From the IMG/VR virus record IMGVR_UViG_3300044712_002668, positions 62,001 to 126,000 of that record: a stretch of 64,000 nt of DNA. One strand, given 5' to 3'. Below, piece by piece: positions 2,311-64,000 of this stretch (position 1 is the stretch's first letter; every line of letters begins with the position of its first letter). Under the pieces are notes generated by a model. It ran no database searches. It was not told where the DNA came from and worked only from the letters and a program-made list of their open reading frames with translations. The position numbers were made by a program, and so were the translations under genes.

Positions 2311-3408
2311 ATGAGCATGGCTTTGTTATTTCTTGACGCTAATGCTCATGTTGCTTTAAACCCTGCTGGATTGAAAGCTTTTAATGATTTTTCAAATTCC
2401 ACATTTGCAAGCCACGGCAATGCCATGGCTGCAAATTATTTGGGACGTGAAGCGGCTAAAGAATTAGAAAAAGCCCGCACAAAAATTGCCGAATTGATTG
2501 GTGCCAAAAGTCACAATCAAATAATATTCACATCTACTTGCACTCAAGCATGTGAATGGGGTTTGGATATCTTAAAAACACGTAATTATAAAAATGTTTT
2601 TGTTTCTCAACTTGAACATCCAGCAATAAGATATCATTTCCGTGATTTGTTTGGACAATCAGAATTGCATGTTACCAAAGATGGTGTTGCAATATGTGAA
2701 CAACCATATCCTGATAGTACTGCGGTTGTTTGTTTGCATGTGCAAAATGAAATAGGTACTATACAACCAATAGAAAATATAAAAGCAGATGTAGTTAGTG
2801 ATATGAGCCAAAGCTTGGCCAAACTTCCAATAAACATGTCTAAACTGTCCAATGTTAAATTGGCTATGTTTGCTGCTCATAAATTTGGCGGCCCTTCTAG
2901 TTTAGGTTTCATGTATATTCAAGATACTGATTGGTGGAAAGAATTTGGCAGCGGTAGTAGATATTATTTTGATAGAGCTGGAAGCCCAGATGTTGTTTCA
3001 GCAATTATGACCGCTGCATCTTTAGAACATGCAATGAAAACCATGCCAGAACGTTATGATCGCATGGTTCGTTTCAGAAACACTCTTGAACCAGAACTAG
3101 AAAATTTAGGATTTAAAATAATAGGAAAGAATACTACAAGATTACCTAATACAACATTTATACAATTAAAAAAGCGTATGGGTCCATATGTTATGTCACA
3201 ACTTGAATCTGAAAACATATATGTTGGATTAGGTTCTGCTTGTGGCTCAATGAATACAGGTTCCAGTCCTGTAATGAATGCATTAGGCTATGGCGGTACA
3301 GCCCATGATTTTCTCCGTATATCTCAATTTGGAGAATATGCTGAAAAAGAAGCTAAAACAGTGGCTGCAGCGATAGCCAAGTACTGTCCAAAATCAGATA
3401 TTCCTTGA
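2311..3408 (+). CDS. iscS: Cysteine desulfurase (IscS/NifS-like, PLP-dependent class V)
   Basis: FLDANA, EHPAI, NEIGTIQP, AHKFGGP (PLP lysine), GSAC (catalytic Cys). Confidence 0.88.
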   Translation: MSMALLFLDANAHVALNPAGLKAFNDFSNSTFASHGNAMAANYLGREAAKELEKARTKIAELIGAKSHNQIIFTSTCTQACEWGLDILKTRNYKNVFVSQLEHPAIRYHFRDLFGQSELHVTKDGVAICEQPYPDSTAVVCLHVQNEIGTIQPIENIKADVVSDMSQSLAKLPINMSKLSNVKLAMFAAHKFGGPSSLGFMYIQDTDWWKEFGSGSRYYFDRAGSPDVVSAIMTAASLEHAMKTMPERYDRMVRFRNTLEPELENLGFKIIGKNTTRLPNTTFIQLKKRMGPYVMSQLESENIYVGLGSACGSMNTGSSPVMNALGYGGTAHDFLRISQFGEYAEKEAKTVAAAIAKYCPKSDIP

Positions 3409-51221: not shown

Positions 51222-54191
51222 ATGATGACAACACGAAACTCAGTCTCTATTATACAAAATCGTTGGTATGACGGTCAACGCGTTGATCAGCAGGATTTAG
51301 TTACCGATCAAACCAGGAATGTGGGTACAGATGCGGCGATTATAAATAATCACTTTGGCTCAGGTGTTCTACCTAATGCAAGTTTACCTGTAACAGTTTT
51401 CGATACAGATAACCTTCTTCCAGATCAGGTAGCATTGATAGCTTCTGGTGATTTTGACGGTACAGGTTTAGAACCTATTGGTCAACCAAGTGATACCAGC
51501 AATGGTAATCAGTTATCTGTTGAGTTGATGGATTCAGATTTAAACGGACCATCTACTGCATTTGGTAGAATGAGTACAAAGGTACTTATAATAGGTCTTG
51601 ACTTTCAAGGATCTCTTCAGTACGAAAGGTTTTACTTCTATAAGAAAGAAAAACAAGTTTCTCAAAAACATTATGCAAAAGTGTTATGTGTTTTCTTCAA
51701 TGATTTTATAGGTAACACAAACTGTTCAAGGGATTTGGGCGGCAGGGTTGTAATCAAAGAAGCTAACAGTTTTGAGTTGTCCAGGGATCCTGTCATGACA
51801 GCTCAGGATACCCAACCAAACATATTTTTTCGTGATTTCAAGATATCAACATTTTCCGGTGGAACAAATCCTACGGTTACATTGTATCAAGCATTGCAGG
51901 CTGGTATAGGAAACCAATATTCAGTTGATGGTTTAAATATTACCACCACCGCTCTTGAAAACATCTATTTGCCTTCTGGGGATGTAACTACAAAGATAGG
52001 GCAAAAATTTCTAGCTCTAACAAATAACATTCAAAAAATAAGCTTACTTTTAGGTGTTGACCAGGATACCACAACTACTACTGAACATTGGTTTGATTGG
52101 AGTGGAGAGCTTATTGTAAGTGTTTATGCCTTACAAACAACTGTTTCTTCACCAAGCGATCTTGTACCAACTTTAGCTATAGAGTTTGATCCGGCTGCAC
52201 AGCCAATTACTCAGTTCAGTTTGAATCAACAATCATTAAGGGATTTAGGTTATGTACTAAACAATGTTGCTCAACCTATAGATCTTGTTTTTAGTGCTTC
52301 CCCTCTGGGTAGTTCTACAAACTCTGTAATAACGGTTGGTCAATATTATGCGGTTGTTATTAACAGGGCAGGAGATGCAAGTACTGGTAGTATTTTTGCA
52401 GCAGCAGGGGCCACTTCAAACTCTGATACCCGTGTAAGCATCTACTCAGGATTATGGACAGATATACCACAAGAAAGCTTATGGTTTCAGGTATGGACAG
52501 ATGCTGCAAAAGTATCTGATGGACAGGGTTATGATTCTGGTAATGGTATTCAAATACCTAAAACAATACAGAACAGCAGTGGTGCCTATGTTGATTACTC
52601 ATTTGGTTTGAATCAATTTTCTGATACAGGGCATAACACTTTAAATACTGCAATTATAGAAGCTGTCTTGACTCAAAGTCAGCAAGAACAAGATGAAAGA
52701 ACTGGTAGTCCAGTTTATTCTAGACAGCAATATACACCATCACTTAGTTTTGTTACAAACTCAACGCTTCAAACAATCCAAGAAACTGGTAATCCTTTAA
52801 TCATTGGAAGTACAAGGGATACAAACCCTATTAGTAACTATTCTGTAACCGGAACCCAACCATATCCTGGTTTGGTTAAAGGAGATACCTATACCCTTGT
52901 AGCTCCAGATCCATCCGTAATAGCACAAAACCTTATAGGTAGCAAATTGATACCAAATGATGATTGTGCAGGTTTGGATTACCGTATTATGAAAGTGTCA
53001 ATCTGTACCGATGGGTATGGTGATGTAAATGGTGATGGGGTTATTGATGAAGCAGATGCCAATAGAGCTATTGCACTTATTGGCGAATCCCTTTCTTCAG
53101 CATCGACACAACAAAAAATTATTGATGGTTACATATCTACTCTTGAAATATTAAGAGCTGACGTTAATGGTAATGGTATTGTTGATGCTTATGATGCTCA
53201 GTTGATTGCATCATTCATTGCCAGAGATATTTCAACATTCCCATACGGAAGATCCTTTCAGCATGTTGAATTTCAGGTTCAACAGAGTATAGGAAGATAT
53301 GATGGATACTTTGATTGTGATGGGTATATCAGACTAGACGGTTATATTGGGCAGAACAAAATAGACCCTGCAAGTCTTGGTATTTATGCTCAAATTTATG
53401 ATGGGTATATTATACCACCACAAATGGATAAGGCAGATCCTGCTTGGACAACGGTACCATATGTACCTGTACCATTCCTGATTACACCTCAGGCATTCTG
53501 GCAAGATTATCAAGTTCAATTCAGTAGTGCTACAAGAATGGTACCTGCTGTATTTACATCTCAGAGCGGAGGCAGAGTATCAACCTCGACTGTTTGTACA
53601 AGCCCAAGCATAACTAGCTGTAGTAATGTTACTGATATTATAACACAGACAGATCCTGGTAAAAATGATATCTTTATTCCAGATAACTTGATTATAAGAG
53701 GAAACATTTTAAATGTTGATGGTACTTTTTATAAGCAAGATTTTGAGGTAAAGCATTTCGTCTTGGAGCTTCCACCAGAAGTATTCTCACAAGCATCTAT
53801 TGATGTTTTCCATAAATTGGTAGCAGATGCAGGGGATGGTTTTACATCTGCTGGATATCCTGCAATGAGATATAGTGATTGTACCACTGTAGGGTTGGAT
53901 GCTTTGATTTATAACAGACTTCGTTTTGGAGTATCTATTCAATCAATAGTACCCAACCTTGATGGTTATAGTGTCGCTGATGGTTATGGCGTAATTGTTG
54001 ATGACTTGATTGGTATATACATGGATCCTATTTATGGAATTATGACAATTACAGCAAAGGATCTTGACGAGGATTTGACCAAACCAAACTTGATTACAAA
54101 GATCGAGATTGTGGTGTATGCCAAGAAAGCTGGATGGCAAAATACTACTCAAATAATTCCACCAAATCAAATCATGGGACTTGTTACTTGA
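51222..54191 (+). CDS. Baseplate/fibre-attachment protein with a dockerin-like EF-hand pair and 8 DGY motifs
   Basis: N-terminal WYDGQRVDQQDL..DQ; GDVNGDGVIDEADA and ADVNGNGIVDAYDA. Confidence 0.55.
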   Translation: MMTTRNSVSIIQNRWYDGQRVDQQDLVTDQTRNVGTDAAIINNHFGSGVLPNASLPVTVFDTDNLLPDQVALIASGDFDGTGLEPIGQPSDTSNGNQLSVELMDSDLNGPSTAFGRMSTKVLIIGLDFQGSLQYERFYFYKKEKQVSQKHYAKVLCVFFNDFIGNTNCSRDLGGRVVIKEANSFELSRDPVMTAQDTQPNIFFRDFKISTFSGGTNPTVTLYQALQAGIGNQYSVDGLNITTTALENIYLPSGDVTTKIGQKFLALTNNIQKISLLLGVDQDTTTTTEHWFDWSGELIVSVYALQTTVSSPSDLVPTLAIEFDPAAQPITQFSLNQQSLRDLGYVLNNVAQPIDLVFSASPLGSSTNSVITVGQYYAVVINRAGDASTGSIFAAAGATSNSDTRVSIYSGLWTDIPQESLWFQVWTDAAKVSDGQGYDSGNGIQIPKTIQNSSGAYVDYSFGLNQFSDTGHNTLNTAIIEAVLTQSQQEQDERTGSPVYSRQQYTPSLSFVTNSTLQTIQETGNPLIIGSTRDTNPISNYSVTGTQPYPGLVKGDTYTLVAPDPSVIAQNLIGSKLIPNDDCAGLDYRIMKVSICTDGYGDVNGDGVIDEADANRAIALIGESLSSASTQQKIIDGYISTLEILRADVNGNGIVDAYDAQLIASFIARDISTFPYGRSFQHVEFQVQQSIGRYDGYFDCDGYIRLDGYIGQNKIDPASLGIYAQIYDGYIIPPQMDKADPAWTTVPYVPVPFLITPQAFWQDYQVQFSSATRMVPAVFTSQSGGRVSTSTVCTSPSITSCSNVTDIITQTDPGKNDIFIPDNLIIRGNILNVDGTFYKQDFEVKHFVLELPPEVFSQASIDVFHKLVADAGDGFTSAGYPAMRYSDCTTVGLDALIYNRLRFGVSIQSIVPNLDGYSVADGYGVIVDDLIGIYMDPIYGIMTITAKDLDEDLTKPNLITKIEIVVYAKKAGWQNTTQIIPPNQIMGLVT

Positions 54192-54204: not shown

Positions 54205-54261
54205 ATGAGAATCAAGATTCAGCAGTTTTTATTTGGCGCTAATCACAGCTGGATTAGCTGA
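54205..54261 (+). pseudogene. Orphan 5' stub of the glycosyltransferase gene (MRIKIQQFLFGANHSWIS*)
   Basis: First 11 codons encode the same peptide as the GT start at 55024, with synonymous changes. Confidence 0.85.
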
Positions 54262-54274
54262 TATATATTAATAC

Positions 54275-55022
54275 ATGGAAATTACGTGTATTAAATGTAA
54301 CACTAAACTATTGGCTAGTGCTGATAATTTTCAATGGAGAAATGATAGTAAAAAGTGGAGACCAGTATGTAAACCATGTATATCACTTAATGCAAAAAAA
54401 AGATATTCTAAAAATAAAGAAGTGATAAAAACCAAAGCGTCAGAATATCGTAAAAAAAATCGTATTAAAATAATAAACTTCATGAGAGAATATAATTATA
54501 GAGATGAAGTCCAGTTAAGAATGAAACAATATCGTATTGATAATAGAAAAAAATTAAGACAAAAAGAAAAAGCATGGAGACAAAAAAATCCTGAAAAAGC
54601 AAAATTGATTTCTCAAAGAAAAACAAAGAAAAGAAACAAAAACGCTTTGGTTAGAATAAGACAAAATGTAAGTAGAGCTATTGGGTTAGCATTGAAAAGA
54701 AAAGGATCCTCAAAACAAGGAGATTCTATATTTTCATATTTACCTTATTCATTTCAAGATTTAAAAAAAACATATTGAAAAACATTTTGAACCATGGATG
54801 AATTGGGATAATTATGGTGTATACAAAGCAAAAGAGTGGGATGATAATAATCAATTAACGTGGAAATGGCAAATAGATCATATAATACCGCATTCTGAGT
54901 TTTTATATTCATCAATGAAAGATCCTGTTTTTATAAAATGTTGGAGTTTAGATAATTTAAGACCATATTCTGCTAAAAATAATTGTATAGATGGGTGTTT
55001 TAGAAGCAGACATAAAGGATAA
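54275..55022 (+). pseudogene. HNH-type homing endonuclease split by a frameshift
   Basis: CIKC...CKPC Zn finger and basic helix (54275..54778) continue as HIEKHFEPWMNWDNYG...WQIDHIIP...NLRPYSAKNN if one A is removed from the A8 run at 54763-54770. Confidence 0.8.
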
Positions 55023-55023
55023 T

Positions 55024-56151
55024 ATGAGGATAAAAATTCAACAATTTTTGTTTGGACAAGGAGCCCATTCATGGGCGTTGGTTGGTAAAAATATTGGCAG
55101 AGCATTAATTCATCTAGGCCATGAAGTAGATTTTGTTTCTACTGATGGGTTTGAAGATAAATTTTGTCCAAATGATTTAAAACCTTTTGTCAAAAAAGAT
55201 CCTGTAGGAGAGTATGATTGTCAAATCAGTTACACAGCTCCTCACAATTGGCCGAACTATTTATCTTATGGAAAAAAGAATCGTTTTGCTATATGGAACT
55301 ATGAGTATAACAACAAAAAAGTAGATCAAGGTTATACGGCTTTGCTACAAGGATTCGGAAAGTACTACAAAAATACAGATATGGTATTACCTTCTTCTAA
55401 TTTTACAAAAGAAGTTTTTAAAAGTATGATGATTCCAGAAGATAAGATGGTTGTTATTCCTCATGGAATTGATCTGGAACAATTCTCTACAACTAAAAAG
55501 TTTCCTCTAAAAACAAAGAAATCAAAAAAGATTCTTTTGAATATAGCTCAACCTCATAGAAGGAAAGCTATCCCATTAGCTTTAGAAGCTTTCGGAAAAG
55601 CTTTTACTAAAGATGATGATGTTTGTTTAGTAGCTAAAGTTTTTAAACAAAACAATAAAGGACAAGCTTTCGATGTAGATTTTACCGGAATGTACAAAAC
55701 ATTTGAAACCAAATATCCTAAACATGCAGAGGTAGAGTTTGTACATAACTACATAGATAACATAGCTGAAATATATAATTCTTGTGATGTTAATTTTTCT
55801 GCTACATATGCAGAATGTTGGCATCTTCCTTCTTTAGAAGCTTTAGCATGTGGATTAATTAATGTTGTTCCTAGATATGGAGGACAATTAGATTTCTGTG
55901 ATGATTTTAATTCTTTACTTATAGATGGTAATGTAGTTCGTGCTCCACGTGATCATCAATACTGGAAGTTTAATCCTTTTGCTGTTCATTTCCAAATAGA
56001 TACGAATGACGCTGCGCAGAAGTTGCGGTGGGCGGTTCATCCAGAAGAAGGGAAAGTTCTTAAAGAAAAATTCGTGTCGAGCATGTCCGAAACAGCCCAG
56101 AAATTCTCCTGGGAGAATGCTGTCAGAAAGATTCTTGATCTATGCACGTAA
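55024..56151 (+). CDS. Glycosyltransferase family 4 (GT-B)
   Basis: VIPHGID, RKAIPLALEAF, ECWHLPSLEALACG; start at ATG 55024. Confidence 0.88.
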   Translation: MRIKIQQFLFGQGAHSWALVGKNIGRALIHLGHEVDFVSTDGFEDKFCPNDLKPFVKKDPVGEYDCQISYTAPHNWPNYLSYGKKNRFAIWNYEYNNKKVDQGYTALLQGFGKYYKNTDMVLPSSNFTKEVFKSMMIPEDKMVVIPHGIDLEQFSTTKKFPLKTKKSKKILLNIAQPHRRKAIPLALEAFGKAFTKDDDVCLVAKVFKQNNKGQAFDVDFTGMYKTFETKYPKHAEVEFVHNYIDNIAEIYNSCDVNFSATYAECWHLPSLEALACGLINVVPRYGGQLDFCDDFNSLLIDGNVVRAPRDHQYWKFNPFAVHFQIDTNDAAQKLRWAVHPEEGKVLKEKFVSSMSETAQKFSWENAVRKILDLCT

Positions 56152-56279
56152 CCTTACGTCACTTTGATCTTTTCGTGATCAATAAATAAATGCAAAAAGC
56201 TGCGCCAATTAAGTATATATATATTAACTATTAATTAAGATCATTAATAGCAAGTACCATGCCAGATGGAGAACAATAG

Positions 56280-56975
56280 ATGACAAAGTTAGCGATAGTG
56301 GTTTTAGCCTATAACAACTGGAGTTATACGAAACAATGTTTGAGTGATTTGCTTCAGCTTCCTGAAGATCATTCAATTATCCTCGTAGATAACGCCAGTT
56401 CAGATGAAACGAAAAATGTAAGTAAGATCTTTAATGATAAGAAATTGGATGTAATAGTTAATGAAGATAACTATGGTTTTGCTAAAGGGTGTAATATTGG
56501 ATTTAAAAAAGCTCAGGAAAAAAGATCTGAGAATGTCATGTTTTTGAACAATGATATCAGGGTGCGTTCTGAACATAAAAACTGGACGGACAGGGTGCTG
56601 TCCCAACTTTCTTCAAAAACGCTTCTAGGGCCAACTGTAGGTATTCTGGATGGTGATCTCAGGTTCGTTTGTGAGGCGGGTAAGATTCCAGAAAAATATA
56701 CCAACACCTACATGAGTGGTTGGTGTGTTACAGCCACAATGGAAACTTGGAATGAACTGGTATTACCAGGGTATGAGGGGCCGTTTTCCGAGGAGTTTGG
56801 CAAGGCTTTTTTTGAAGACAGCGATCTTGGGTTCAGGGCAAGAAATCAAAACATAAAATTTAACATAGTAGATATTCCTGTACATCATTTTGGTCACAAG
56901 ACAACAGACAAATTGAATACAAATGAGCTTTATAAAAATGCCAGAGAAATTTTCGTAAGGAAGTGGAAAAAATGA
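56280..56975 (+). CDS. Glycosyltransferase family 2
   Basis: IILVDNASSDET, NYGFAKGCNIG, FLNND, FFEDSDLG. Confidence 0.9.
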   Translation: MTKLAIVVLAYNNWSYTKQCLSDLLQLPEDHSIILVDNASSDETKNVSKIFNDKKLDVIVNEDNYGFAKGCNIGFKKAQEKRSENVMFLNNDIRVRSEHKNWTDRVLSQLSSKTLLGPTVGILDGDLRFVCEAGKIPEKYTNTYMSGWCVTATMETWNELVLPGYEGPFSEEFGKAFFEDSDLGFRARNQNIKFNIVDIPVHHFGHKTTDKLNTNELYKNAREIFVRKWKK

Positions 56976-57802
56976 AATTGCATATATTAACTTTAACTTG
57001 GAATGGAAAGAAAAGGCTGGAGGCATTGGCTCCAACCTTGGTTTCTTCCTGTAATCATTTGTCTCATGATCCTATATGGTATATAAGAGATAATGGTTCT
57101 AAAGATGATACTTTAGAATATCTGATGAGTAATGATATTCAAAAAGATAAACCTTTAAAATTAAAGGTTTTGTCTGTAGATCATAATAGGGATTCATTTG
57201 CCAGGTGTGTCAATTCTCTACTGGAGATGGCCAACCCAGCAGATGAGGATCTTGTTATGTTGTTGAATGATGATGTTGTTTTTTTCAAAAATGACAGCAT
57301 TCAAAAAATGATAGATTTACAGGACAAGACTGGGGCAGGGATAGTTGGAGCCAGGTTATTGTATCTTAACACAAACAAACTTCAACATGCCGGGATAATC
57401 TTCAGTAAGAGATATAATTCATTGCCATTTCATTTTCGTCCCGGTGAAGAGTCGGATAAGAACTCTGAAAAGAACAGATATTTCCAAGCTGTTACAGCGG
57501 CATGTTGTATAGTGAAAGCATCATCACTGAAAAAGATCAATGGCATGGATGAGGGTTTTAGATGGGCCTTTGATGATGTGGATATGAACTTTCAGATAGG
57601 TAAGAATCTTGGGGAGAAGATAGCTTATTGTGGTAATGTAGGTATTTATCATGAAGAAAGCGTATCTCTTAAAAAGAACCCTGTAAATAAATTGTTTATG
57701 GATGATAATGTAAAACGATTCCGCTCTAAATGGAATGGTAAATATACTATAGACCATGATATGTATTTGGGTAATTCTTTATATAATGAAATTAAAGTTT
57801 AA
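56972..57802 (+). CDS. Glycosyltransferase family 2
   Basis: DNGSKDDT, LLNDD, LQHAG, AVTAAC, FDDVD. Confidence 0.9.
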   Translation: MKLHILTLTWNGKKRLEALAPTLVSSCNHLSHDPIWYIRDNGSKDDTLEYLMSNDIQKDKPLKLKVLSVDHNRDSFARCVNSLLEMANPADEDLVMLLNDDVVFFKNDSIQKMIDLQDKTGAGIVGARLLYLNTNKLQHAGIIFSKRYNSLPFHFRPGEESDKNSEKNRYFQAVTAACCIVKASSLKKINGMDEGFRWAFDDVDMNFQIGKNLGEKIAYCGNVGIYHEESVSLKKNPVNKLFMDDNVKRFRSKWNGKYTIDHDMYLGNSLYNEIKV

Positions 57803-58739
57803 AAATAAGTTCTTTCCATTTGCTTCGGGGATATCTTGGGAAATTGATCAGGGTAAATATGTAGTACCAAAGATAGACGGTGAAACGTGGAAGAGCGTAT
57901 TGAGCAATAAGGATTTACACATAGTTGTATTCGGGGGTTTGTTAGAATCATTTTTTTCATTTTCTTATGCTGAGGCATTGTCTTCATTAGAGCCTGATAA
58001 AGATTTGTATTGGATAGGTGATGATAAATACAAATGCCTATTAAAGGTTAATGGTCTGTGTAAGCCTGGTCAATCAGGTTTGACAAAAACTGATTTGGAA
58101 AAATATCCAGTTCCCTTGTTTTTCGACAAAGAAGACAATGCTTACTTTAATGTGTTGCATGATTATAAGACAAAGCTAAGCTATTGGGGTCAACACCCAA
58201 AAGAAAATAAACTTCCAATACTAAAACAAATATATAATAATCTAATGATCCCTTGGAATAATTATATTCCAAAAACAAGATCATTAGATTTTTCTTTTTA
58301 TAATCATATCAGTATTAAAAATAAACTATCACATAAAACCATACTTATTATACATGATGAAGAAGATAACGCATTGAATTGGAACAAGCACAACATAAGA
58401 GAATTTGCTTTTTTGGTTGGTAAGCATGGTTTCAAAGTGTGTGTTGCAACGCATCATAGCGGAATGTTCTATGATTCAAAAGTTATAGCTATTGAGTATG
58501 ATATTTTGAAGATATTACAACTGATTACAAAGTCATGGATGGTACTATCATCAAAGATAGACTGGTTGTTTATCGCAATGATGATATCCAATGCACACAT
58601 AGTTTCAAAACATCAGGATGGAATTTATAATTTATTTGACAATGCAGAGTTCATAGGAGCAACAAACGTTATATTTACAGATAAGACTTGGATGTCTCCA
58701 ATGGACGTATGCGCAATTTGTGCGGAAGAGGAAAAATGA
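57786..58739 (+). CDS. Divergent GT-B fold protein (GT9/heptosyltransferase-like)
   Basis: GGLLESFFS..AEAL resembles the GT9 N-terminal motif; lies within the GT operon. Confidence 0.4.
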   Translation: MKLKFKNKFFPFASGISWEIDQGKYVVPKIDGETWKSVLSNKDLHIVVFGGLLESFFSFSYAEALSSLEPDKDLYWIGDDKYKCLLKVNGLCKPGQSGLTKTDLEKYPVPLFFDKEDNAYFNVLHDYKTKLSYWGQHPKENKLPILKQIYNNLMIPWNNYIPKTRSLDFSFYNHISIKNKLSHKTILIIHDEEDNALNWNKHNIREFAFLVGKHGFKVCVATHHSGMFYDSKVIAIEYDILKILQLITKSWMVLSSKIDWLFIAMMISNAHIVSKHQDGIYNLFDNAEFIGATNVIFTDKTWMSPMDVCAICAEEEK

Positions 58740-59494
58740 GTTCAACTTCAATAATGATGGTAACCTATAATAGGCTTGAGTTAACAAAACGTATGTTGTC
58801 TTCTTTATGTAAGACGGTACATTCACCATTCAATTTGGTTATAATAGATAACGCTTCTACAGATGGAACGGTTGAATACCTTCAAAACAAAATAGATACT
58901 GAATTTAAAACAGATCATTTAAGAAATTTATTTACTATATTTAATAAAGAAAACAAAGGTATAGCTATTGGAAGAAACCAGGCATTGAAAAATGGGGTTG
59001 ATGTATTCAACAGTGATTGGTTGGTGACATTGGATAATGATGTAGAGATGCCGGATGGATGGCTGGAGGAGTGTCAGAATATTCTGCAGGCGAATAGGGC
59101 TTATGGGGCGATTGGGGTCAATATGGAGAACAAGCCTTATCCCATAGTGACAAAGAATGGTTTTACGTTTCAGGATAAACCTGCGGGTAATCTTGGTACA
59201 GCTTGTATGGTATTTCCAAAGACCACTCAGAAATTATTGGGTTATTTCAACACAGAGTATGGTCCATATGGGGAAGAGGATGCGGATTTTGGAATGAGGT
59301 TACGTGTATCAGGTTTGAAGCTTGGATACATTGAAAGAATGGGTACGCATTTTGGAGAGGGTGAATTAGATAAAGGCGAGTATCGTGAGTACAAGACAGC
59401 TTGTCATAATAAGAATCTGAAGAAGTTCAATGAGAATTGTGCGCTATATGCACAAGGAAAGAAGAAATTATATATGCCTTATAGTGAGGGTTGA
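58736..59494 (+). CDS. Glycosyltransferase family 2
   Basis: TYNRLELT, IIDNASTDGT, NKGIAIGRN, LDND, YGEEDADFG. Confidence 0.9.
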   Translation: MSSTSIMMVTYNRLELTKRMLSSLCKTVHSPFNLVIIDNASTDGTVEYLQNKIDTEFKTDHLRNLFTIFNKENKGIAIGRNQALKNGVDVFNSDWLVTLDNDVEMPDGWLEECQNILQANRAYGAIGVNMENKPYPIVTKNGFTFQDKPAGNLGTACMVFPKTTQKLLGYFNTEYGPYGEEDADFGMRLRVSGLKLGYIERMGTHFGEGELDKGEYREYKTACHNKNLKKFNENCALYAQGKKKLYMPYSEG

Positions 59495-61497
59495 TGTCTA
59501 GACTGCATAAGACAATTTTATCCTCTGATATCAAACAGTATATTATAAGGTCTAAAAATATACATTTCATTGAAGATGCATGTGTAATTCAGGCTGGGTT
59601 TGGAGAGGTTGAGTTTGATTTTTCCAATACACTAGCAACTTCTTGTGTATTTATATTTAAGAAATCAAAAGGTATTAGTTTTTTTAATGTTAACGGAATG
59701 CCATTATTATCCTCTAATGGATTGAGGGTTGATCTACCAGAAAATAGAAAATTAGTTTGTTCAGTAGACTCACATCATAAAGATATTTTCATTAGTGGTA
59801 TTGACTTATTTACAAATCAAAATATTTCATGGAACACATTATTAAAGATGTGTGATTCATATTCTGGATTAAGACTTGTTGGAACTGATTTATTTGCTTC
59901 TATTGGTTCAAAAATAATATCATCAAAAATATCAGAGATAAAAACAAATCCTGAAAATATGTATGTTATTAATGGTAATGTTGTAAATTTTCTTGGTTCG
60001 TGTAAAGTTACAACATTGCAATTTACTCATATAGAAGAGTGTATTAAAAACACACCAGTAGTAAATGAAGCAATTAATGTTTTAATGAAAAAATCAGAAG
60101 AGCTAGCCTCTGTTTTGGATAGTAATATGGATAATGTAATTTTTGATACATCTATACATGGTTTCAATAATGCTTTTTGTGGGCGGGATACTGATATTGA
60201 TGGTAGTTCCATTTTGATGGATTATGTAGGATCTTATCGTGTTCCTCTTAAAATGTTGCATCCTGGTCAGTATTATACCGTAGCTTTAGATGTAGAAAGG
60301 CTTAATGGTAATGCAAAGTTTTTGTTTAGCATTCAGCCTGATAACAATATGCCGCATGTTTGTATAGCTGCAGGTGGAAGGAAAACATTCAAACAACAGT
60401 TTCTAACAGATGCTAGTGGAGAGTATTTTTTAAATATAGCTAGACACCCATCTTCTACCGGTAAAATAAGAATTACAAAGATTATAATAATAGCTAATTT
60501 TAAATTAGATTTCAATGTAGCAATACCAACTATCTCTGAAATATACACTCCAAAAATAAACTATGTTGCTCCAGAATTGAAACAACAAATTTCTATCGGT
60601 GTACAATCTAGATTTAAGACTTCTTCAAATGAAGATTGTGATTCTGTAAAAAAGTCCTCTATTGAATTTGCTGACGTTGTTCCGAGTTACATTGTATCAA
60701 ATGTTTTGCCATTCAAGGGTAATGTAGATTGTTCTACTCAAGGATCTTTATCTTGGTTTTCAAAGGCTAAGCCGTTTTTGCCAGATGTTATGATGAACAA
60801 ACAATCAAGTGTATTGTTTTGTAATATTGACAATGTAAGGCAGTGTAGCACTGTTGTTTTGGAAGAGTTTGTTTCATTAAATGAAACAGCTGTAAATGCT
60901 TTAAAGACATGCAATAAAATCTTGGTATCTTCAAATAAGAATTTTTCACAACTAGTGGATGTTGGTATTTCCGAAGACAGATTGAGTTATTCTTACAGGC
61001 CATGGCCATATGTAGAGCCTGTTGAGCTAAGGCCATTACTTGGTTCTGATTTTGTTGTGGTTCCCAATAGGGATGATAAGGCTACTCGTAGACTTTTACA
61101 GTGTCTTGAATCTTCTGTACAAAAGATTGTTGTACTAGGGGCTAGAGGACAATACTCTGATTCTGTGTTTACTGTTAATGAATATTTGTATTATCCAAAT
61201 TTGTTATGGCTATTAAGAAACGCAAAGGTTATTTATGATTTTCATATTATTGATGATTATAAATCAGCTTTATTATCTATGGCTTTATCTTTAGGAACAC
61301 CAATTGTGACAAACTCATTTGCTTTTTCCAATGATTCACAGGCTGCTATAAAGCTAGGAAAAGAGCAGCATGGTAATATAATGTTGCCAAGCATAGAAGA
61401 GTTACAGAATACTTTAAAGTTTTTGCCAGACAAAAGAAATATAAATATGAATAATGATTTTCAAAAATGGATTGAAAATTTATTTAATACCAATTAA
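59494..61497 (+). CDS. Multidomain protein: beta-sandwich (CBM-like) N-terminus plus degenerate GT-B-like C-terminus
   Basis: PGQYYTVALDVE..NGN beta-sandwich; C-terminal ALSLGTPIVT resembles GT4 EAxxxGxPVI; within the GT operon. Confidence 0.4.
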   Translation: MSRLHKTILSSDIKQYIIRSKNIHFIEDACVIQAGFGEVEFDFSNTLATSCVFIFKKSKGISFFNVNGMPLLSSNGLRVDLPENRKLVCSVDSHHKDIFISGIDLFTNQNISWNTLLKMCDSYSGLRLVGTDLFASIGSKIISSKISEIKTNPENMYVINGNVVNFLGSCKVTTLQFTHIEECIKNTPVVNEAINVLMKKSEELASVLDSNMDNVIFDTSIHGFNNAFCGRDTDIDGSSILMDYVGSYRVPLKMLHPGQYYTVALDVERLNGNAKFLFSIQPDNNMPHVCIAAGGRKTFKQQFLTDASGEYFLNIARHPSSTGKIRITKIIIIANFKLDFNVAIPTISEIYTPKINYVAPELKQQISIGVQSRFKTSSNEDCDSVKKSSIEFADVVPSYIVSNVLPFKGNVDCSTQGSLSWFSKAKPFLPDVMMNKQSSVLFCNIDNVRQCSTVVLEEFVSLNETAVNALKTCNKILVSSNKNFSQLVDVGISEDRLSYSYRPWPYVEPVELRPLLGSDFVVVPNRDDKATRRLLQCLESSVQKIVVLGARGQYSDSVFTVNEYLYYPNLLWLLRNAKVIYDFHIIDDYKSALLSMALSLGTPIVTNSFAFSNDSQAAIKLGKEQHGNIMLPSIEELQNTLKFLPDKRNINMNNDFQKWIENLFNTN

Positions 61498-62418
61498 AAC
61501 ATCAATAATCCTTTCAAAAAAACTTTCATGGGATATTATTTTTAATAACCCTTCAGGATTGTGTAGGTTTTCTTTAACGGCATTTGTCATATTATTGAAA
61601 TTATCTTCGTTATAATTAATTACTTCATTATATAATGAATCCATTTTTACAGATATTTTTTTACCATCCTTTATAACGAATTTTCTTAAATCGATGTAAC
61701 TATCTGGTGAGAATTTATAATCATCTATATTATGACATCCCATATATAAAGGTACAGTGCCAGAATACCATACGTCTGGCATTTTTTCACTTAAATAGTT
61801 CCAGGAATATACTGGATCGTAGCAGTTTTCTGAACATAAAGAAAATTTTACCTCTTTTAGTATTGCGTGTTTGTCTGGAGCAGGTCCTTTATAATAAGGC
61901 TTACTTATTGGTATTTGTCCATACCAAGAAACGGGAAAACCTTTGTTGTGAAAAAGATCCGCTATAAAGCTTCTTAATTCATATAATGAAGAAATATGAT
62001 TTGTTGTTTTATTATTAGCGATAATTACTAATTCATTTCTTTTTTCATTCCATGGTTTCCAGCCATTTATAATATTTTGTGCGGAGGGTGGTTGAAACCA
62101 TGATGGGTGATTTATTGTAGTAACTTTATGTGATATAGCTGTATTTTCAAAAGCTTTTCCACACCATGCGAATATGTGTTTATGTTTATCCAAAAAATTA
62201 AGATTATAATCACATGGGTTGATACACATTGGTTCTAGAACAAGGAAACAATCGTTTGGTTGTGGGTTTTGTCCGGAGTACCAATTTATAGCTAGATTAC
62301 ACATGTCATCTCTGCGGTGAGATGACATCCATACTTTTCCTTTTTCATTTTCATATCTTGGAGTTGTTACTGGTCCATGATCCAGATAAATCATATTTAT
62401 ATTTATTTTTTCGTTCAT
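61480..62418 (-). CDS. Glycosyltransferase family 10 (alpha-1,3/4-fucosyltransferase-like)
   Basis: KFSLCSENC....NYLSEKMPDVW..GTVPLYMG matches the GT10 signature. Confidence 0.82.
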   Translation of the reverse strand: MNEKININMIYLDHGPVTTPRYENEKGKVWMSSHRRDDMCNLAINWYSGQNPQPNDCFLVLEPMCINPCDYNLNFLDKHKHIFAWCGKAFENTAISHKVTTINHPSWFQPPSAQNIINGWKPWNEKRNELVIIANNKTTNHISSLYELRSFIADLFHNKGFPVSWYGQIPISKPYYKGPAPDKHAILKEVKFSLCSENCYDPVYSWNYLSEKMPDVWYSGTVPLYMGCHNIDDYKFSPDSYIDLRKFVIKDGKKISVKMDSLYNEVINYNEDNFNNMTNAVKENLHNPEGLLKIISHESFFERIIDVLIGIK

Positions 62419-62443
62419 GTACTACCTTGATATATTTGTTGGT

Positions 62444-63196
62444 ATGCAAGAAAAATCATTTGTCATAGTTATAGCTAGTTACAAAAATGCTCCATGGTAT
62501 CGTCAGAATATACAGTCTGTATTGAATCAACGATACTCTAATTATAGGGTAATATATACTGATGATTGTTCTCCTGATAATACTGGTGGATTGATTGAGC
62601 AATTTTTACAACAAAACGATCCTGAAAAGCGTGTAACTTTAATAAAAAATCAGGAACGTAAGGGAGCTATTTACAATTTATATCATATGATTCATTCATG
62701 TAATGACGATGATATTATTATTACTGTTGATGGTGATGATTGGTTGACCAATCCAGATGTTTTATCTACACTAAACCAGGTTTATTCTAACGAAGATGTG
62801 TGGATGACATATGGTCAATATAGATCTTATCCAGATAATAGAATTGGGTGTTCAAGGCAAATTCCACCAGAAGTAGTAAACTCTTCAGGGTACCGTAAGT
62901 ATCATTGGTGCTCTTCACATCTTAGAACTTTTTATGCTTGGCTTTTCAAAAAAATCAAGCAAGAAGATTTCTTTCATAATGGAACATGGATTCCGATGAC
63001 TTGGGATTTGGCTATGATGTTTCCTATGTTAGAGATGGCAGGCACTCGGCATAAGTTTGTTTCCGATGTTTTATATATTTACAATTGTGAAAACCCAATA
63101 AATGATTCTAAGGTAAATTTACAATTACAACAAGGATTGGAGATGTTTTTCAGGTTTCAAAAACCACAATATCCTCGATTGAATAATAGGGAATAA
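62444..63196 (+). CDS. Glycosyltransferase family 2
   Basis: SVLNQ.Y.NYRVIYTDDCSPD, VDGDDWL, SHLRTF; likely start at ATG 62444. Confidence 0.88.
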   Translation: MQEKSFVIVIASYKNAPWYRQNIQSVLNQRYSNYRVIYTDDCSPDNTGGLIEQFLQQNDPEKRVTLIKNQERKGAIYNLYHMIHSCNDDDIIITVDGDDWLTNPDVLSTLNQVYSNEDVWMTYGQYRSYPDNRIGCSRQIPPEVVNSSGYRKYHWCSSHLRTFYAWLFKKIKQEDFFHNGTWIPMTWDLAMMFPMLEMAGTRHKFVSDVLYIYNCENPINDSKVNLQLQQGLEMFFRFQKPQYPRLNNRE

Positions 63197-63198
63197 AC

Positions 63199-63933
63199 AT
63201 GGCTTGTTTTAAAGAATTAGGTAAATATGGAAGGCTTGGTAATGCTTTATTTCAAATAGCAGCAACTATAGCTTATTCAAAAAGATATAATGAAAATTAT
63301 TGTTTTCCTAAATGGGAATATCAAGATTGTTTTAATTTTGATCAATCTAATTTTTTAAATCATACGCCAAGATATGATAATGTGTATAATGAAGATAAAT
63401 ATACCTATAGCAATATTCCATATAAACCAAACTGTAACTTACATGGATACTTTCAAAGTAAAAAATATTTTGAAGATCAAGAGGGTTATATAAAAAACAT
63501 CTTAACACCAAAAGAAAAAAAAGAATCTGGTTTATATGGTGATGTTTGTGGTATTCATATTCGTAGAGGAGATTATATACAATTTAAAGATTTTCATACA
63601 GTATTACAAGTGGATTATTATAGAAAAGCAATGAGTTGTATCCCGGTATCAAAGTTTTTGATTATTTCAGATGATCCGGAATGGTGCAAAATTGCTTTTG
63701 CATATGATGAGAGATGCACTGTAAAGAAACAAGGTTCTGTTATGGATGATTTTACAACACTATCAGCTTGTGGTCATAATATCATTGCAAACTCTTCTTT
63801 TTCATGGTGGGCGGCGTATTTGAATCCCAATCAAAACAAAACCGTGGTAGCTCCAAAAGAATGGTTTGGTCCAAAACTAAAAGATATTAATCCCATCTCT
63901 GATTTGATTCCTTCAGAATGGAGGTTGGTATGA
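63199..63933 (+). CDS. Glycosyltransferase family 11 (alpha-1,2-fucosyltransferase-like)
   Basis: GRLGNALFQ, GYFQS, HIRRGDY, SDD..WC, IIANSSFSWW. Confidence 0.92.
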   Translation: MACFKELGKYGRLGNALFQIAATIAYSKRYNENYCFPKWEYQDCFNFDQSNFLNHTPRYDNVYNEDKYTYSNIPYKPNCNLHGYFQSKKYFEDQEGYIKNILTPKEKKESGLYGDVCGIHIRRGDYIQFKDFHTVLQVDYYRKAMSCIPVSKFLIISDDPEWCKIAFAYDERCTVKKQGSVMDDFTTLSACGHNIIANSSFSWWAAYLNPNQNKTVVAPKEWFGPKLKDINPISDLIPSEWRLV

Positions 63934-64000
63934 CAAGAGTTATATATGCTCCGATTAATTTTGGTGATGTAGTACAAGACGGTGTTTACGATGCCTTTAG
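63930..64000 (+). CDS. Partial CDS (3'-truncated), probably the next gene of the glycan operon
   Basis: ATGA overlap with the previous stop; MTRVIYAPINFGDVVQDGVYDAF runs to the window edge. Confidence 0.5.
   Translation, partial: MTRVIYAPINFGDVVQDGVYDAF

What the first reader, a model, noticed from the sequence alone, without database searches (positions are those of the whole stretch)
55024..64000. At least nine glycosyltransferase(-like) genes directly after the tail module, including GT10 and GT11 fucosyltransferase families
Gene order: GT4, GT2, GT2, GT9-like, GT2, CBM+GT-like, GT10, GT2, GT11, then a further ORF at the edge. No flippase, polymerase or GtrA/B-type membrane component is visible and the enzymes look soluble. 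That fits cytoplasmic stepwise assembly of a complex glycan on protein (virion) rather than host O-antigen conversion. Having both alpha-1,2 and alpha-1,3/4 fucosyltransferase families suggests a branched, deoxyhexose-capped glycan. Probably the writer half of the DGY hypothesis; DNA hypermodification is the alternative.
Basis: partly seen in the sequence, partly recalled or inferred. Interest (0 to 1): 0.75.

Follow-up and report, generated by a model that had tools for sequence, protein, structure and literature searches.

The report
Huge-phage fucose glycan-building gene island
A roughly 455-kb bacteriophage carries a 23-kb block of about 30 genes (ten sugar-adding enzymes in a row plus its own GDP-fucose pathway) that should build a complex fucose-containing sugar chain in the infected cell. 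What the chain is attached to, most likely the phage particle's own proteins, is not settled.

Summary
One correction: the GT10-like gene is on the minus strand.

The region is the first half of a 23.4-kb, low-GC island (32.6% against 37.9%). Past the window it continues with an FkbM methyltransferase, HAD phosphatases, two sugar-1-P nucleotidyltransferases, Gmd, an Fcl-like enzyme and an RmlB-like dehydratase, then tubulin.

No island protein has a membrane segment. No initiating transferase, flippase or polymerase was found here or in two near-complete relatives. Those relatives carry a true ThyA+DHFR pair, which argues against sugar-modified DNA.

In 20 of 20 related huge-phage loci, a strongly conserved GT4 follows the last tail gene, followed by a variable set of GTs.

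The acceptor is unresolved: virion proteins about 0.45, host envelope glycan about 0.30. DGY is enriched 13-fold in virion-block proteins only, and 11-fold in a distant relative, but its link to the GTs is only correlative. An analogous fucose island exists in cyanophage S-SRM01, so this is a new variant of a known kind.

The parts
51222..54191 (+). Last gene of the tail module (989 aa, 8 DGY sites). It is the conserved anchor just upstream of the island.
   Evidence: 25 IMG/VR homologs at 38-60% identity. A GT4 follows in 20 of 20 loci that have enough downstream DNA. Its DGY triplets are conserved in 55% of homologs, against 15% for the average triplet.
54275..54778 (+). 167-aa, very basic ORF with an N-terminal Zn-ribbon-like motif; GC 26%. 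Probably a mobile insertion and not part of the pathway.
   Evidence: No family hit. Contigs of two freshwater runs join 54233/54252 directly to 55088, skipping it. Related domains lie inside the GT clusters of relatives.
54991..56151 (+). GT4-family GT-B glycosyltransferase. It is the conserved core enzyme of the island and the candidate initiating transferase. The true start may be 55024.
   Evidence: Pfam PF13439/PF00534. 560 metagenomic homologs, 120 of them at 49-72% identity, on contigs up to 463 kb. It is more conserved than the adjacent tail protein. The family profile gives only generic GT4 hits in the PDB.
56280..56975 (+). GT2 (GT-A) glycosyltransferase a; part of the conserved core.
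   Evidence: PF00535 3.6e-14. Homologs are present in most relatives, including the minimal clusters.
56963..57802 (+). GT2 glycosyltransferase b; part of the conserved core.
   Evidence: PF00535 5.9e-7. DED at residue 94. Homologs in most relatives.
57756..58739 (+). GT-B fold protein, GT9-like by structure only.
   Evidence: Model pLDDT 90.6. Foldseek top hits are WaaC/WaaF and a GT9 protein, TM about 0.5, and also TibC. No PF01075 hit and no PDB sequence hit. Absent from the minimal clusters of distant relatives.
58688..59494 (+). GT2 glycosyltransferase c.
   Evidence: PF00535 2.6e-21.
59491..61497 (+). 668-aa fusion of two CBM-like beta-sandwich domains (residues 1-178 and 211-337) with a C-terminal GT-B transferase domain (407-668).
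   Evidence: Model pLDDT 69. CBM51 and malectin-like hits. VIA Z 14-15 to PimA, GlgM and PglA for residues 407-668, and Z about 12 to CBM36/CBM16 for 211-337. Length and N-terminal part vary among relatives.
61480..62418 (-). GT10-like alpha-1,3/4-fucosyltransferase. It is the only island gene on the minus strand.
   Evidence: PF00852 2.3e-4 alone, but 8 of 9 family members hit it, best 2e-9. The family profile's top five PDB hits are all GT10 FucTs: 9s6a 1.6e-10, 2nzw 1e-7, FUT9 1e-3. The TEK-containing motif is invariant.
62417..63196 (+). GT2 glycosyltransferase d.
   Evidence: PF00535 1.3e-19. DDD at residue 97.
63199..63933 (+). GT11 alpha-1,2-fucosyltransferase, short form (244 aa).
   Evidence: PF01531 3.2e-26. 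HIRRGD motif at residue 120. 35-37% identical to cyanomyovirus GT11s. The nearest relatives are short GT11s on 420-463 kb contigs.
63918..64000 (+). Start of the tenth GT (330 aa, Glyco_trans_1_2). It runs on to position 64910 in extended window coordinates (L001 918-1910). Behind it comes the sugar-nucleotide half of the island, up to genome position 140,361.
   Evidence: PF13524 1.5e-16. Downstream genes: FkbM methyltransferase, two HAD phosphatases, a PMI-like cupin, an NTP-transferase+kinase fusion, an NTP-transferase, Gmd (444 bits, over the cut-off), Fcl-like, RmlB-like, then tubulin.

Best explanation
The finding is the transferase half of a phage-borne glycan-biosynthesis island of about 23.4 kb and about 30 genes (genome 116,991-140,361). 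The phage is a huge phage; the original contig is 454,833 bp.

Shown by homology:
- Ten soluble GTs in a row: GT4, four GT2, a GT9-like GT-B, a CBM-GT-B fusion, a GT10-like FucT, a GT11 FucT and a Glyco_trans_1_2.
- An FkbM methyltransferase.
- Gmd plus an Fcl-like enzyme, giving GDP-L-fucose.
- Nucleotidyltransferases, phosphatases and an RmlB-like 4,6-dehydratase, giving at least one further NDP-6-deoxyhexose.

Inferred: during infection the phage makes its own activated sugars and assembles a branched oligosaccharide in the cytoplasm, one sugar at a time. The glycan would be alpha-1,2- and alpha-1,3/4-fucosylated and probably O-methylated.

The strongly conserved GT4, which follows the last tail gene throughout the clade, most likely puts on the first sugar. 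The variable GTs behind it would diversify the outer part of the glycan.

Most likely acceptor (inferred, not shown): the phage's own virion proteins, glycosylated before or during assembly. The DGY tripeptide is a candidate but unproven site.

Confidence that this is a fucose-glycan biosynthesis island is about 0.9. Confidence that virion proteins are the acceptor is about 0.45. The figure below refers to the acceptor claim.
For: - Family and fold assignments.
- No TM segment in any of the roughly 30 island proteins, and no polytopic membrane protein in this genome or in the complete relative G002.
- No Bac_transf, WecA/MraY, Wzx or Wzy_C family in G000, G001 (91% complete) or G002 (100% complete).
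- The island is tightly packed, co-oriented with the structural genes, and lies between two virion-protein blocks at 46-116 kb and 153-170 kb.
- An eleventh GT2-like gene sits just downstream of a 1741-aa fibre-like protein, separated from it by one 214-aa ORF.
- GT4 is syntenic with the last tail gene in 20 of 20 loci and is more conserved than that gene, up to 71% against up to 60% identity.
- GT4 and GT11 belong to lineages that circulate on 420-463 kb phage-like contigs, rather than being recent host acquisitions.
- DGY occurs 80 times against 6.2 expected in virion-block proteins and 8 against 9.3 elsewhere. Its permutations and DGF, NGY and EGY are not enriched.
- The same DGY bias appears in the distant relative G002, 26 against 2.4 expected.
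- DGY sites are far better conserved than average triplets.
- Precedent for virion glycosylation by phage GTs: the mycobacteriophage work of Freeman 2023, as cited in PMC12619734.
Against: - No direct evidence exists for any glycoprotein.
- The island has the hallmarks of bacterial O-antigen/LOS clusters: low GC, GTs together with NDP-sugar genes, and hypervariability between relatives.
- It lies at a boundary between genome modules, with tubulin and a UvsW-like helicase following it. Accessory genes collect at such boundaries in any case.
- The analogous island of cyanophage S-SRM01 lies among auxiliary metabolic genes, and that phage's structural proteins show no DGY bias.
- T4 structural proteins show a 3-fold DGY excess without any such island.
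- The GT4 + DGY-protein complex prediction gave no answer.
- No RNA data were found to show late expression.
- The record is only 78% complete by CheckV's estimate.
Confidence: 0.45

Rival explanations
1. Host-envelope remodelling. The soluble or peripheral GTs extend a host lipid-linked acceptor (lipid A-core, or an Und-PP-sugar made by the host's own initiating enzyme). The host's flippase, ABC transporter and ligase then export the fucosylated glycan. This would change the cell surface and block superinfection by rival phages.
For: - The cluster composition, low GC and hypervariability match O-antigen/LOS loci.
- The nearest fold matches of the 327-aa GT are the LPS heptosyltransferases WaaC/WaaF.
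- From general knowledge: the GT10+GT11 pair is what bacteria such as Helicobacter pylori use for Lewis-type LPS, and an FkbM methyltransferase could cap chains as in ABC-type pathways.
- Iyer et al. read similar jumbo-cyanophage clusters this way (PMC7824862).
- The S-SRM01 island lies within about 6 kb of an LpxH-like gene.
Against: - A glycan built by ten or more GTs would have to be accepted by the host's flippase, polymerase or ligase, and none is supplied by the phage.
- GT4 stays 39-72% identical across phages with GC from 38 to 45%, which presumably have different hosts.
- GT4 and GT11 form phage-specific lineages rather than looking like recent host genes.
- GT4 is fixed at the end of the tail module in all relatives.
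Confidence: 0.3
2. Another acceptor. Possibilities are a host protein (for example a pilin, flagellin or S-layer receptor), a non-virion phage protein, a free oligosaccharide, or a glycosylated small molecule or glycolipid made for defence or counter-defence.
For: - GT4-family enzymes include small-molecule and lipid glycosyltransferases. The nearest PDB sequence hits include BshA, and the GT-B domain of the 668-aa protein is closest to PimA.
- Several island ORFs have no recognisable function.
- Iyer et al. propose secondary-metabolite roles for some cyanophage sugar clusters.
Against: - Ten GTs, including two terminal fucosyltransferases and a CBM-bearing GT, point to a sizeable glycan on a macromolecule.
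- No scaffold-forming enzymes (PKS, NRPS, lipid synthesis) were seen in the island.
Confidence: 0.17
3. DNA hypermodification. The GTs would decorate hydroxymethylated bases of the phage DNA with sugars to escape restriction.
For: Phage GTs are classically DNA-modifying, and diverse glycans on phage DNA have been reported (Pyle 2024, as cited in PMC12619734). This record is only 78% complete, so a base-modifying enzyme could lie in the missing part.
Against: - No thymidylate-synthase-family hydroxymethylase, Tet/JBP or T4 beta-GT family was found in G000. The Tet and beta-GT searches had no positive control.
- Each near-complete relative has a single TS-family gene. It passes the thymidylate synthase equivalog cut-off and sits next to a DHFR, which marks ordinary dTMP synthesis.
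- From general knowledge: GT10 and GT11 fucosylate glycan acceptors, and known DNA glycans carry one to three sugars, not the product of ten GTs.
Confidence: 0.04

Closest known systems
Fucose/GT island of jumbo cyanomyovirus S-SRM01 (MW015081.1, about 191-205 kb), and the 'capsular polysaccharide modification' clusters of jumbo cyanophages described by Iyer et al. 2021 (PMC7824862)
   Same: Phage-encoded Gmd (55% identical), Fcl (37%), a PNKP-like HAD phosphatase (38%), a large NDP-sugar synthase, an FkbM methyltransferase, several GT2s and GT11 alpha-1,2-FucTs (30-35%) in one co-oriented block.
   Different: - Most GTs are not orthologous.
- S-SRM01 has a SIS isomerase, a NodZ-like FucT and a GT25, but no GT4/GT9-like/GT10/CBM-GT set.
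- Its island sits among photosynthesis genes rather than at the end of the tail module.
- Its structural proteins show no DGY bias.
- The function of those clusters is also only predicted.
Chlorovirus PBCV-1 capsid glycosylation machinery (from general knowledge, not tested here)
   Same: The virus encodes its own GDP-mannose 4,6-dehydratase and GDP-fucose synthase, plus soluble cytoplasmic GTs and a sugar methyltransferase. These build a fucose-containing, methylated, branched glycan on the major capsid protein at non-canonical sites. A chlorovirus GT (B736L, 3oy2) appears among the PDB hits of both GT-B proteins here.
   Different: It is a eukaryotic-algal virus, its genes are scattered rather than in one island, and no sequence-level orthology is shown beyond family membership.
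Mycobacteriophage virion glycosylation (Freeman et al. 2023, known here only through its citation in PMC12619734)
   Same: Phage-encoded soluble GTs modify capsid and tail-tube subunits, and no membrane machinery is involved.
   Different: Those phages have two to four GTs, no NDP-sugar pathway and no fucosyltransferases. The sites are C-terminal tails, not a dispersed tripeptide. The paper itself could not be read.
Bacterial Lewis-antigen LPS synthesis with GT10 + GT11 fucosyltransferases (for example Helicobacter pylori FucT, PDB 2nzw)
   Same: The same two fucosyltransferase families together with gmd/fcl. H. pylori FucT is among the top PDB hits of the GT10-like profile.
   Different: The bacterial system builds on a lipid-linked O-antigen with the cell's own carrier, flippase and ligase. 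None of these is encoded here.
'Moraphages', aquatic jumbo phages with four core GT orthogroups (PMC12619734)
   Same: A metagenomic large-phage lineage in which several GTs belong to the conserved core genome. The authors likewise leave DNA, host and virion targets open.
   Different: Moraphage genomes reach up to 307 kb, and no tubulin is mentioned. Whether this phage is related could not be tested because no sequences were at hand.

Membership tests
GT11 alpha-1,2-fucosyltransferase | Match to PF01531 above the gathering score | tested here: met
   92.7 bits against a cut-off of 23.9, E 3.2e-26. The match covers profile positions 104-278, because the protein is a short 244-aa form.
GT11 alpha-1,2-fucosyltransferase | HxRRxD GDP-fucose-binding motif (motif known from the literature on the family) | tested here: met
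   HIRRGD at residue 120.
GT10 alpha-1,3/4-fucosyltransferase | Match to PF00852 above the gathering score | tested here: inconclusive
   The window's protein scores 21.3 bits against a cut-off of 23.9. Eight of nine orthologs match at E <= 0.01, best E 2e-9.
GT10 alpha-1,3/4-fucosyltransferase | Profile-level homology to solved GT10 enzymes across the C-terminal nucleotide-binding motif | tested here: met
   The top five PDB hits of profile A3 are all GT10 FucTs, E from 1.6e-10 to 1e-3. The alignment spans the conserved ...EN...Y.TEK... block.
GT9 heptosyltransferase | Sequence match to PF01075 or to solved GT9 enzymes | tested here: not met
   No PF01075 match in the genome. No PDB sequence hit with the single sequence or with the profile.
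GT9 heptosyltransferase | GT-B fold closest to WaaC/WaaF | tested here: inconclusive
   The top Foldseek hits are WaaC, WaaF and a GT9 protein, but at TM about 0.5 and rmsd 6-8 A. No SIS/GmhA heptose gene was found in the island.
De novo GDP-L-fucose pathway (Gmd + Fcl) | GDP-mannose 4,6-dehydratase equivalog | tested here: met
   TIGR01472 444 bits against a cut-off of 415. PF16363 E 1.7e-122.
De novo GDP-L-fucose pathway (Gmd + Fcl) | GDP-L-fucose synthase equivalog | tested here: inconclusive
   NF047922 is the best family (247 bits) but falls under the 500-bit cut-off. The protein is 37% identical to the annotated Fcl of S-SRM01.
Wzx/Wzy- or ABC-dependent surface polysaccharide locus | Initiating phosphoglycosyl transferase, flippase, polymerase/ligase | tested here: not met
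   PF02397, PF00953, PF01943 and PF04932 are absent from G000, G001 and G002, with positive controls. No polytopic membrane protein was found. ABC2_membrane and GtrA were not searched by profile.
Phage DNA glycosylation (T4-type or TET-type) | Enzyme that makes a hydroxymethylated base (TS-family hydroxymethylase or Tet/JBP) | tested here: not met
   None in G000. The relatives' only TS-family gene is a true ThyA next to a DHFR. The Tet search had no positive control, and G000 is 78% complete.
Virion protein glycosylation system (mycobacteriophage or chlorovirus type) | Glycan covalently attached to capsid or tail proteins | not testable with these tools
   This needs virions or co-expression with mass spectrometry. 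The complex prediction gave no answer.
Virion protein glycosylation system (mycobacteriophage or chlorovirus type) | Soluble virus-encoded GTs without lipid-carrier machinery, linked to the structural genes | tested here: met
Jumbo-cyanophage sugar/GT island (S-SRM01 type) | Shared gene content: gmd, fcl, PNKP-like phosphatase, NDP-sugar synthase, FkbM, GT2, GT11 | tested here: met

The most novel reading that the evidence does not exclude
A whole clade of roughly 450-kb phages runs a cytoplasmic, sequon-directed protein glycosylation system. The conserved GT4 would attach a sugar to the tyrosine (or aspartate) of DGY sites scattered over more than 20 virion proteins. A fast-evolving set of further GTs, including alpha-1,2- and alpha-1,3/4-fucosyltransferases fed by the phage's own GDP-fucose, would then build strain-specific glycan coats on the particle.
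Probability: 0.15. Interest if true: 0.9.

Novelty: new variant of a known kind. Interest (0 to 1): 0.6.

Why it matters
With ten to eleven GTs and a complete activated-fucose supply, this would be one of the largest glycosylation gene sets described in a bacteriophage. It comes close to what giant algal viruses carry.

Its conserved-core-plus-variable-shell layout, fixed at the end of the tail module across hundreds of metagenomic relatives, suggests that a surface glycan is a central and fast-evolving trait of this huge-phage clade.

If the acceptor is the virion, that would extend phage particle glycosylation well beyond mycobacteriophages. It would also offer a testable sequon, DGY. If the acceptor is the host envelope, it would be a large lytic-phage surface-conversion system that relies on host export.

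Either way, the soluble GT10 and GT11 enzymes, the CBM-GT fusion and the GT4 are directly testable in vitro.

Tried and rejected
- PHROGs searches of the unknown island and structural proteins gave almost nothing.
- Megablast of the region against GenBank phages found no match.
- The 668-aa protein found no relatives through the viral-contig peptide scan.
- Pfam at a lax E-value and the ESM Atlas left eight island ORFs and the 340-aa core-associated protein unexplained.
- The GT4 family profile against the PDB gave only generic GT4 matches and no clue to the acceptor.
- The complex prediction of GT4 with a 120-aa protein carrying three DGY sites gave no answer, so it counts neither for nor against.
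- An 8-mer search for a shared promoter in 152 upstream regions found nothing.
- The sigma-70 promoter scan was at shuffle level. The terminator-like sites (14 against 5.7 expected in the window stretch) lie mostly inside ORFs, so transcription units could not be defined.
- No RNA run was listed, so expression timing is unknown.
- Host inference from gmd failed: the nearest bacterial Gmd proteins (45-55% identity) come from mixed phyla.
- I considered that DGY is simply a generic beta-turn motif of myovirus structural proteins, and rejected this only in part. T4 shows 3-fold enrichment and S-SRM01 none, against 13-fold here.
- I rejected the idea that the IMG/VR 'provirus' label means the island is host DNA. 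The island is flanked by phage genes on both sides and is syntenic in more than 20 viral contigs.

Full report
WHAT IS THERE

The window is bases 62,001-126,000 of a single 335,988-bp IMG/VR virus record. The record has GC 37.9%, CheckV completeness of 78%, and is labelled 'provirus'. The same proteins are on record on a 454,833-bp contig. The record is therefore a trimmed part of a roughly 455-kb huge-phage contig, assembled from a rhizosphere metagenome and also present in freshwater runs.

- GT4 at 54991-56151.
- GT2 at 56280-56975, 56963-57802, 58688-59494 and 62417-63196.
- GT11 at 63199-63933 (E 3e-26), with an intact HIRRGD motif.
- A GT10-like gene at 61480-62418.

One detail was missed: the GT10-like gene is on the minus strand.

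Its Pfam score alone is just under the cut-off. I aligned nine orthologs from related phages. Eight of them hit PF00852, and the family profile's five best PDB matches are all GT10 alpha-1,3-fucosyltransferases.

The two ORFs without Pfam hits were modelled from family alignments:
- The 327-aa protein (pLDDT 90.6) is a GT-B fold. Its nearest solved structures are the GT9 heptosyltransferases WaaC and WaaF, but only at TM about 0.5. There is no sequence-level GT9 signal.
- The 668-aa protein has two CBM-like beta-sandwiches followed by a compact GT-B domain resembling GT4 enzymes such as PimA (Z 14-15).
- The ORF at the window's edge is a tenth GT, Glyco_trans_1_2.

THE ISLAND CONTINUES BEYOND THE WINDOW

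I fetched the next 20 kb (L001). After the tenth GT come:
- two unknown ORFs;
- an FkbM-family methyltransferase;
- two HAD phosphatases, one of them PNKP-like;
- a cupin of the mannose-6-phosphate-isomerase type;
- a 516-aa fusion of a nucleotidyltransferase with an APH-like kinase;
- a second sugar-1-phosphate nucleotidyltransferase;
- GDP-mannose 4,6-dehydratase, which passes the NCBIfam equivalog cut-off;
- a GDP-fucose-synthase-like reductase;
- two charged unknown proteins;
- an RmlB-like NDP-hexose 4,6-dehydratase.

A tubulin and a UvsW-like helicase follow.

The whole island (genome 116,991-140,361) has GC 32.6% against 37.9% for the genome. Its genes abut or overlap, and all but the GT10-like gene are on the strand of the structural genes.

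MEMBRANE AND DNA-MODIFICATION COMPONENTS

None of the roughly 30 island proteins has a hydrophobic segment strong enough for a transmembrane helix, and the genome has no polytopic membrane protein.

Profile searches with working positive controls found none of the following in this record or in two relatives that are 91% and 100% complete:
- phosphoglycosyl transferase (PF02397);
- WecA/MraY (PF00953);
- Wzx (PF01943);
- Wzy/ligase (PF04932).

I read the complete 473-kb relative in full, and it has no protein with more than four hydrophobic segments.

This record also lacks any thymidylate-synthase-family, Tet/JBP or T4 beta-glucosyltransferase match. The last two searches had no positive control.

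The two near-complete relatives each have one TS-family gene. It passes the thymidylate synthase equivalog cut-off by a wide margin and lies next to a dihydrofolate reductase, which is the signature of ordinary dTMP synthesis rather than of a hydroxymethylase. Sugar-modified DNA is therefore unlikely.

RELATIVES

The 989-aa protein that ends the tail module has 25 homologs in IMG/VR, at 38-60% identity, on contigs up to 473 kb. In all 20 loci with enough downstream DNA, a GT4 ortholog follows within a few kilobases. That ortholog is more conserved than the tail protein, reaching 71% identity.

What comes after the GT4 varies:
- Close relatives carry different mixes of the GT2s, the GT9-like protein, CBM-GT fusions of different length, one or two GT10-like genes, GT11s and fused multi-GT proteins.
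- Distant relatives have a minimal set: the GT4, up to two GT2s, a phage-specific unknown protein and the RmlB-like dehydratase, directly followed by the tubulin.

The island thus has a conserved core and a hypervariable extension.

The GT4 family has 560 metagenomic members, many on 420-463 kb contigs. The short GT11 likewise belongs to a lineage circulating on such contigs. These genes are long-standing phage genes, not recent pickups from a host.

THE DGY MOTIF

- DGY is the most over-represented tripeptide in the proteome, 90 observed against 17 expected.
- The excess is confined to the two virion-protein blocks: 80 observed against 6.2 expected, in 23 of 60 proteins. The rest of the genome has 8 against 9.3.
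- None of the five permutations of D, G and Y is enriched, and neither are DGF, DGW, NGY or EGY.
- In the 989-aa protein, the eight DGY sites are retained in 55% of homologs, against 15% for the average triplet. Sites are also gained and lost.
- The distant, complete relative shows the same bias in homologs of the structural proteins, 26 against 2.4.

Controls temper this. The T4 structural region has a 3-fold excess, 9 against 2.8. Cyanophage S-SRM01, which has an analogous fucose island, has none, 2 against 1.9.

The motif is therefore real, specific and constrained in this clade. Its connection with the GTs rests on co-occurrence in one lineage. A complex prediction of GT4 with a small protein carrying three DGY sites returned no answer.

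WHAT IT MOST LIKELY DOES

Shown by homology: the phage can make GDP-L-fucose and at least one more NDP-6-deoxyhexose. It also has ten or eleven soluble GTs, including both fucosyltransferase families, and a sugar methyltransferase. The eleventh, GT2-like gene lies just downstream of a 1741-aa fibre-like protein in the second structural block, separated from it by one 214-aa ORF.

Inferred: stepwise cytoplasmic assembly of a branched, fucosylated and probably methylated oligosaccharide. The conserved GT4 would start the chain, and the variable GTs would diversify its outer part.

For the acceptor I favour virion proteins, at about 0.45, for these reasons:
- the fixed position of GT4 at the end of the tail module;
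- the island's place between two structural blocks;
- the complete lack of carrier or export genes;
- the phage-specific ancestry of the GTs;
- the DGY pattern.

The main rival, at about 0.30, is remodelling of a host envelope glycan using the host's carrier and export steps. LPS-core GTs are just as TM-free, and the island looks like an O-antigen locus. Iyer et al. read similar jumbo-cyanophage clusters in this way (PMC7824862), and the S-SRM01 island lies among auxiliary genes close to an LpxH-like gene.

Other acceptors, such as host proteins, free oligosaccharides or small molecules, get about 0.17. DNA gets about 0.04.

COMPARISON WITH WHAT IS KNOWN

The closest described thing is the fucose island of S-SRM01. 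It shares Gmd (55% identical), Fcl (37%), a PNKP-like phosphatase (38%), GT11s (30-35%), FkbM and GT2s. It has different other GTs and a different genomic setting, and its function is untested.

Functionally, the best analogues for the favoured model are chlorovirus capsid glycosylation (general knowledge) and mycobacteriophage virion glycosylation (cited in PMC12619734). 'Moraphages' also have core GTs, but I could not test kinship.

I therefore rate this a new variant of a known kind. It is larger and differently anchored than the known phage islands, and it comes with an intriguing but unproven candidate sequon.

LIMITS

- There is no isolate, no host, and no expression or protein data.
- The record is 78% complete, and absence claims lean on two relatives.
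- Several island ORFs remain unexplained.
- The transmembrane prediction is a simple hydropathy scan.
- The promoter and terminator scans did not define transcription units.

Noticed in passing
window 54233-55088: Contigs of two freshwater metagenome runs join 54233/54252 directly to 55088. This skips the 167-aa Zn-ribbon, very basic ORF (GC 26%) and the 74-aa ORF between the tail gene and GT4. Related domains sit inside the GT clusters of relatives (L005 21315-22106; L024 14376-15203 and 18648-19559). It looks like a mobile insertion.
   Followed up: partly
whole genome; window 1-54191 and genome 153-170 kb: The tripeptide DGY is 13-fold over-represented in virion-block proteins only (80 against 6.2 expected). 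It is order- and residue-specific, better conserved than average triplets, and also enriched in a distant 473-kb relative. T4 shows 3-fold enrichment and S-SRM01 none.
   Followed up: partly
genome 168,203-169,000 (L031 3203-4000): An eleventh GT2-like gene, only marginally over Pfam's cut-off (23.6 bits against 23.3). It lies just downstream of a 1741-aa DGY-rich fibre-like protein in the second structural block, separated from it by one 214-aa ORF.
   Followed up: partly
L001 15364-16704 and 16770-18245 (genome 140,364-143,245): A tubulin/FtsZ-family GTPase (PF00091 7e-17; 24% identical to a Bacillus phage G protein) and a UvsW-like helicase directly follow the island. Both are conserved at this position in distant relatives.
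   Followed up: no
window 2311-3408: A class-V aminotransferase / cysteine-desulfurase-like gene (PF00266 2e-31) lies inside the structural region.
   Followed up: no
genome 207,513-208,535, minus strand (L032 1513-2535): A 340-aa phage-specific protein of unknown function. Its homologs sit inside the minimal GT clusters of distant relatives (L020-L026), between the GT4/GT2 genes and the dehydratase. In this genome it has moved elsewhere.
   Followed up: partly
whole record: IMG/VR labels the 336-kb record a 'provirus' at 78% completeness, yet the same proteins are on record on a 454,833-bp contig. The low-GC sugar island may have misled the provirus trimming.
   Followed up: no
L027 461-2867 and L028 463-2379 (relatives G002 and G001): The relatives carry a thyA-DHFR pair. 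In G002 a GuaB/GMP-reductase-like gene sits next to it. This nucleotide-metabolism block was not found in the present record and probably lies in its missing part.
   Followed up: partly
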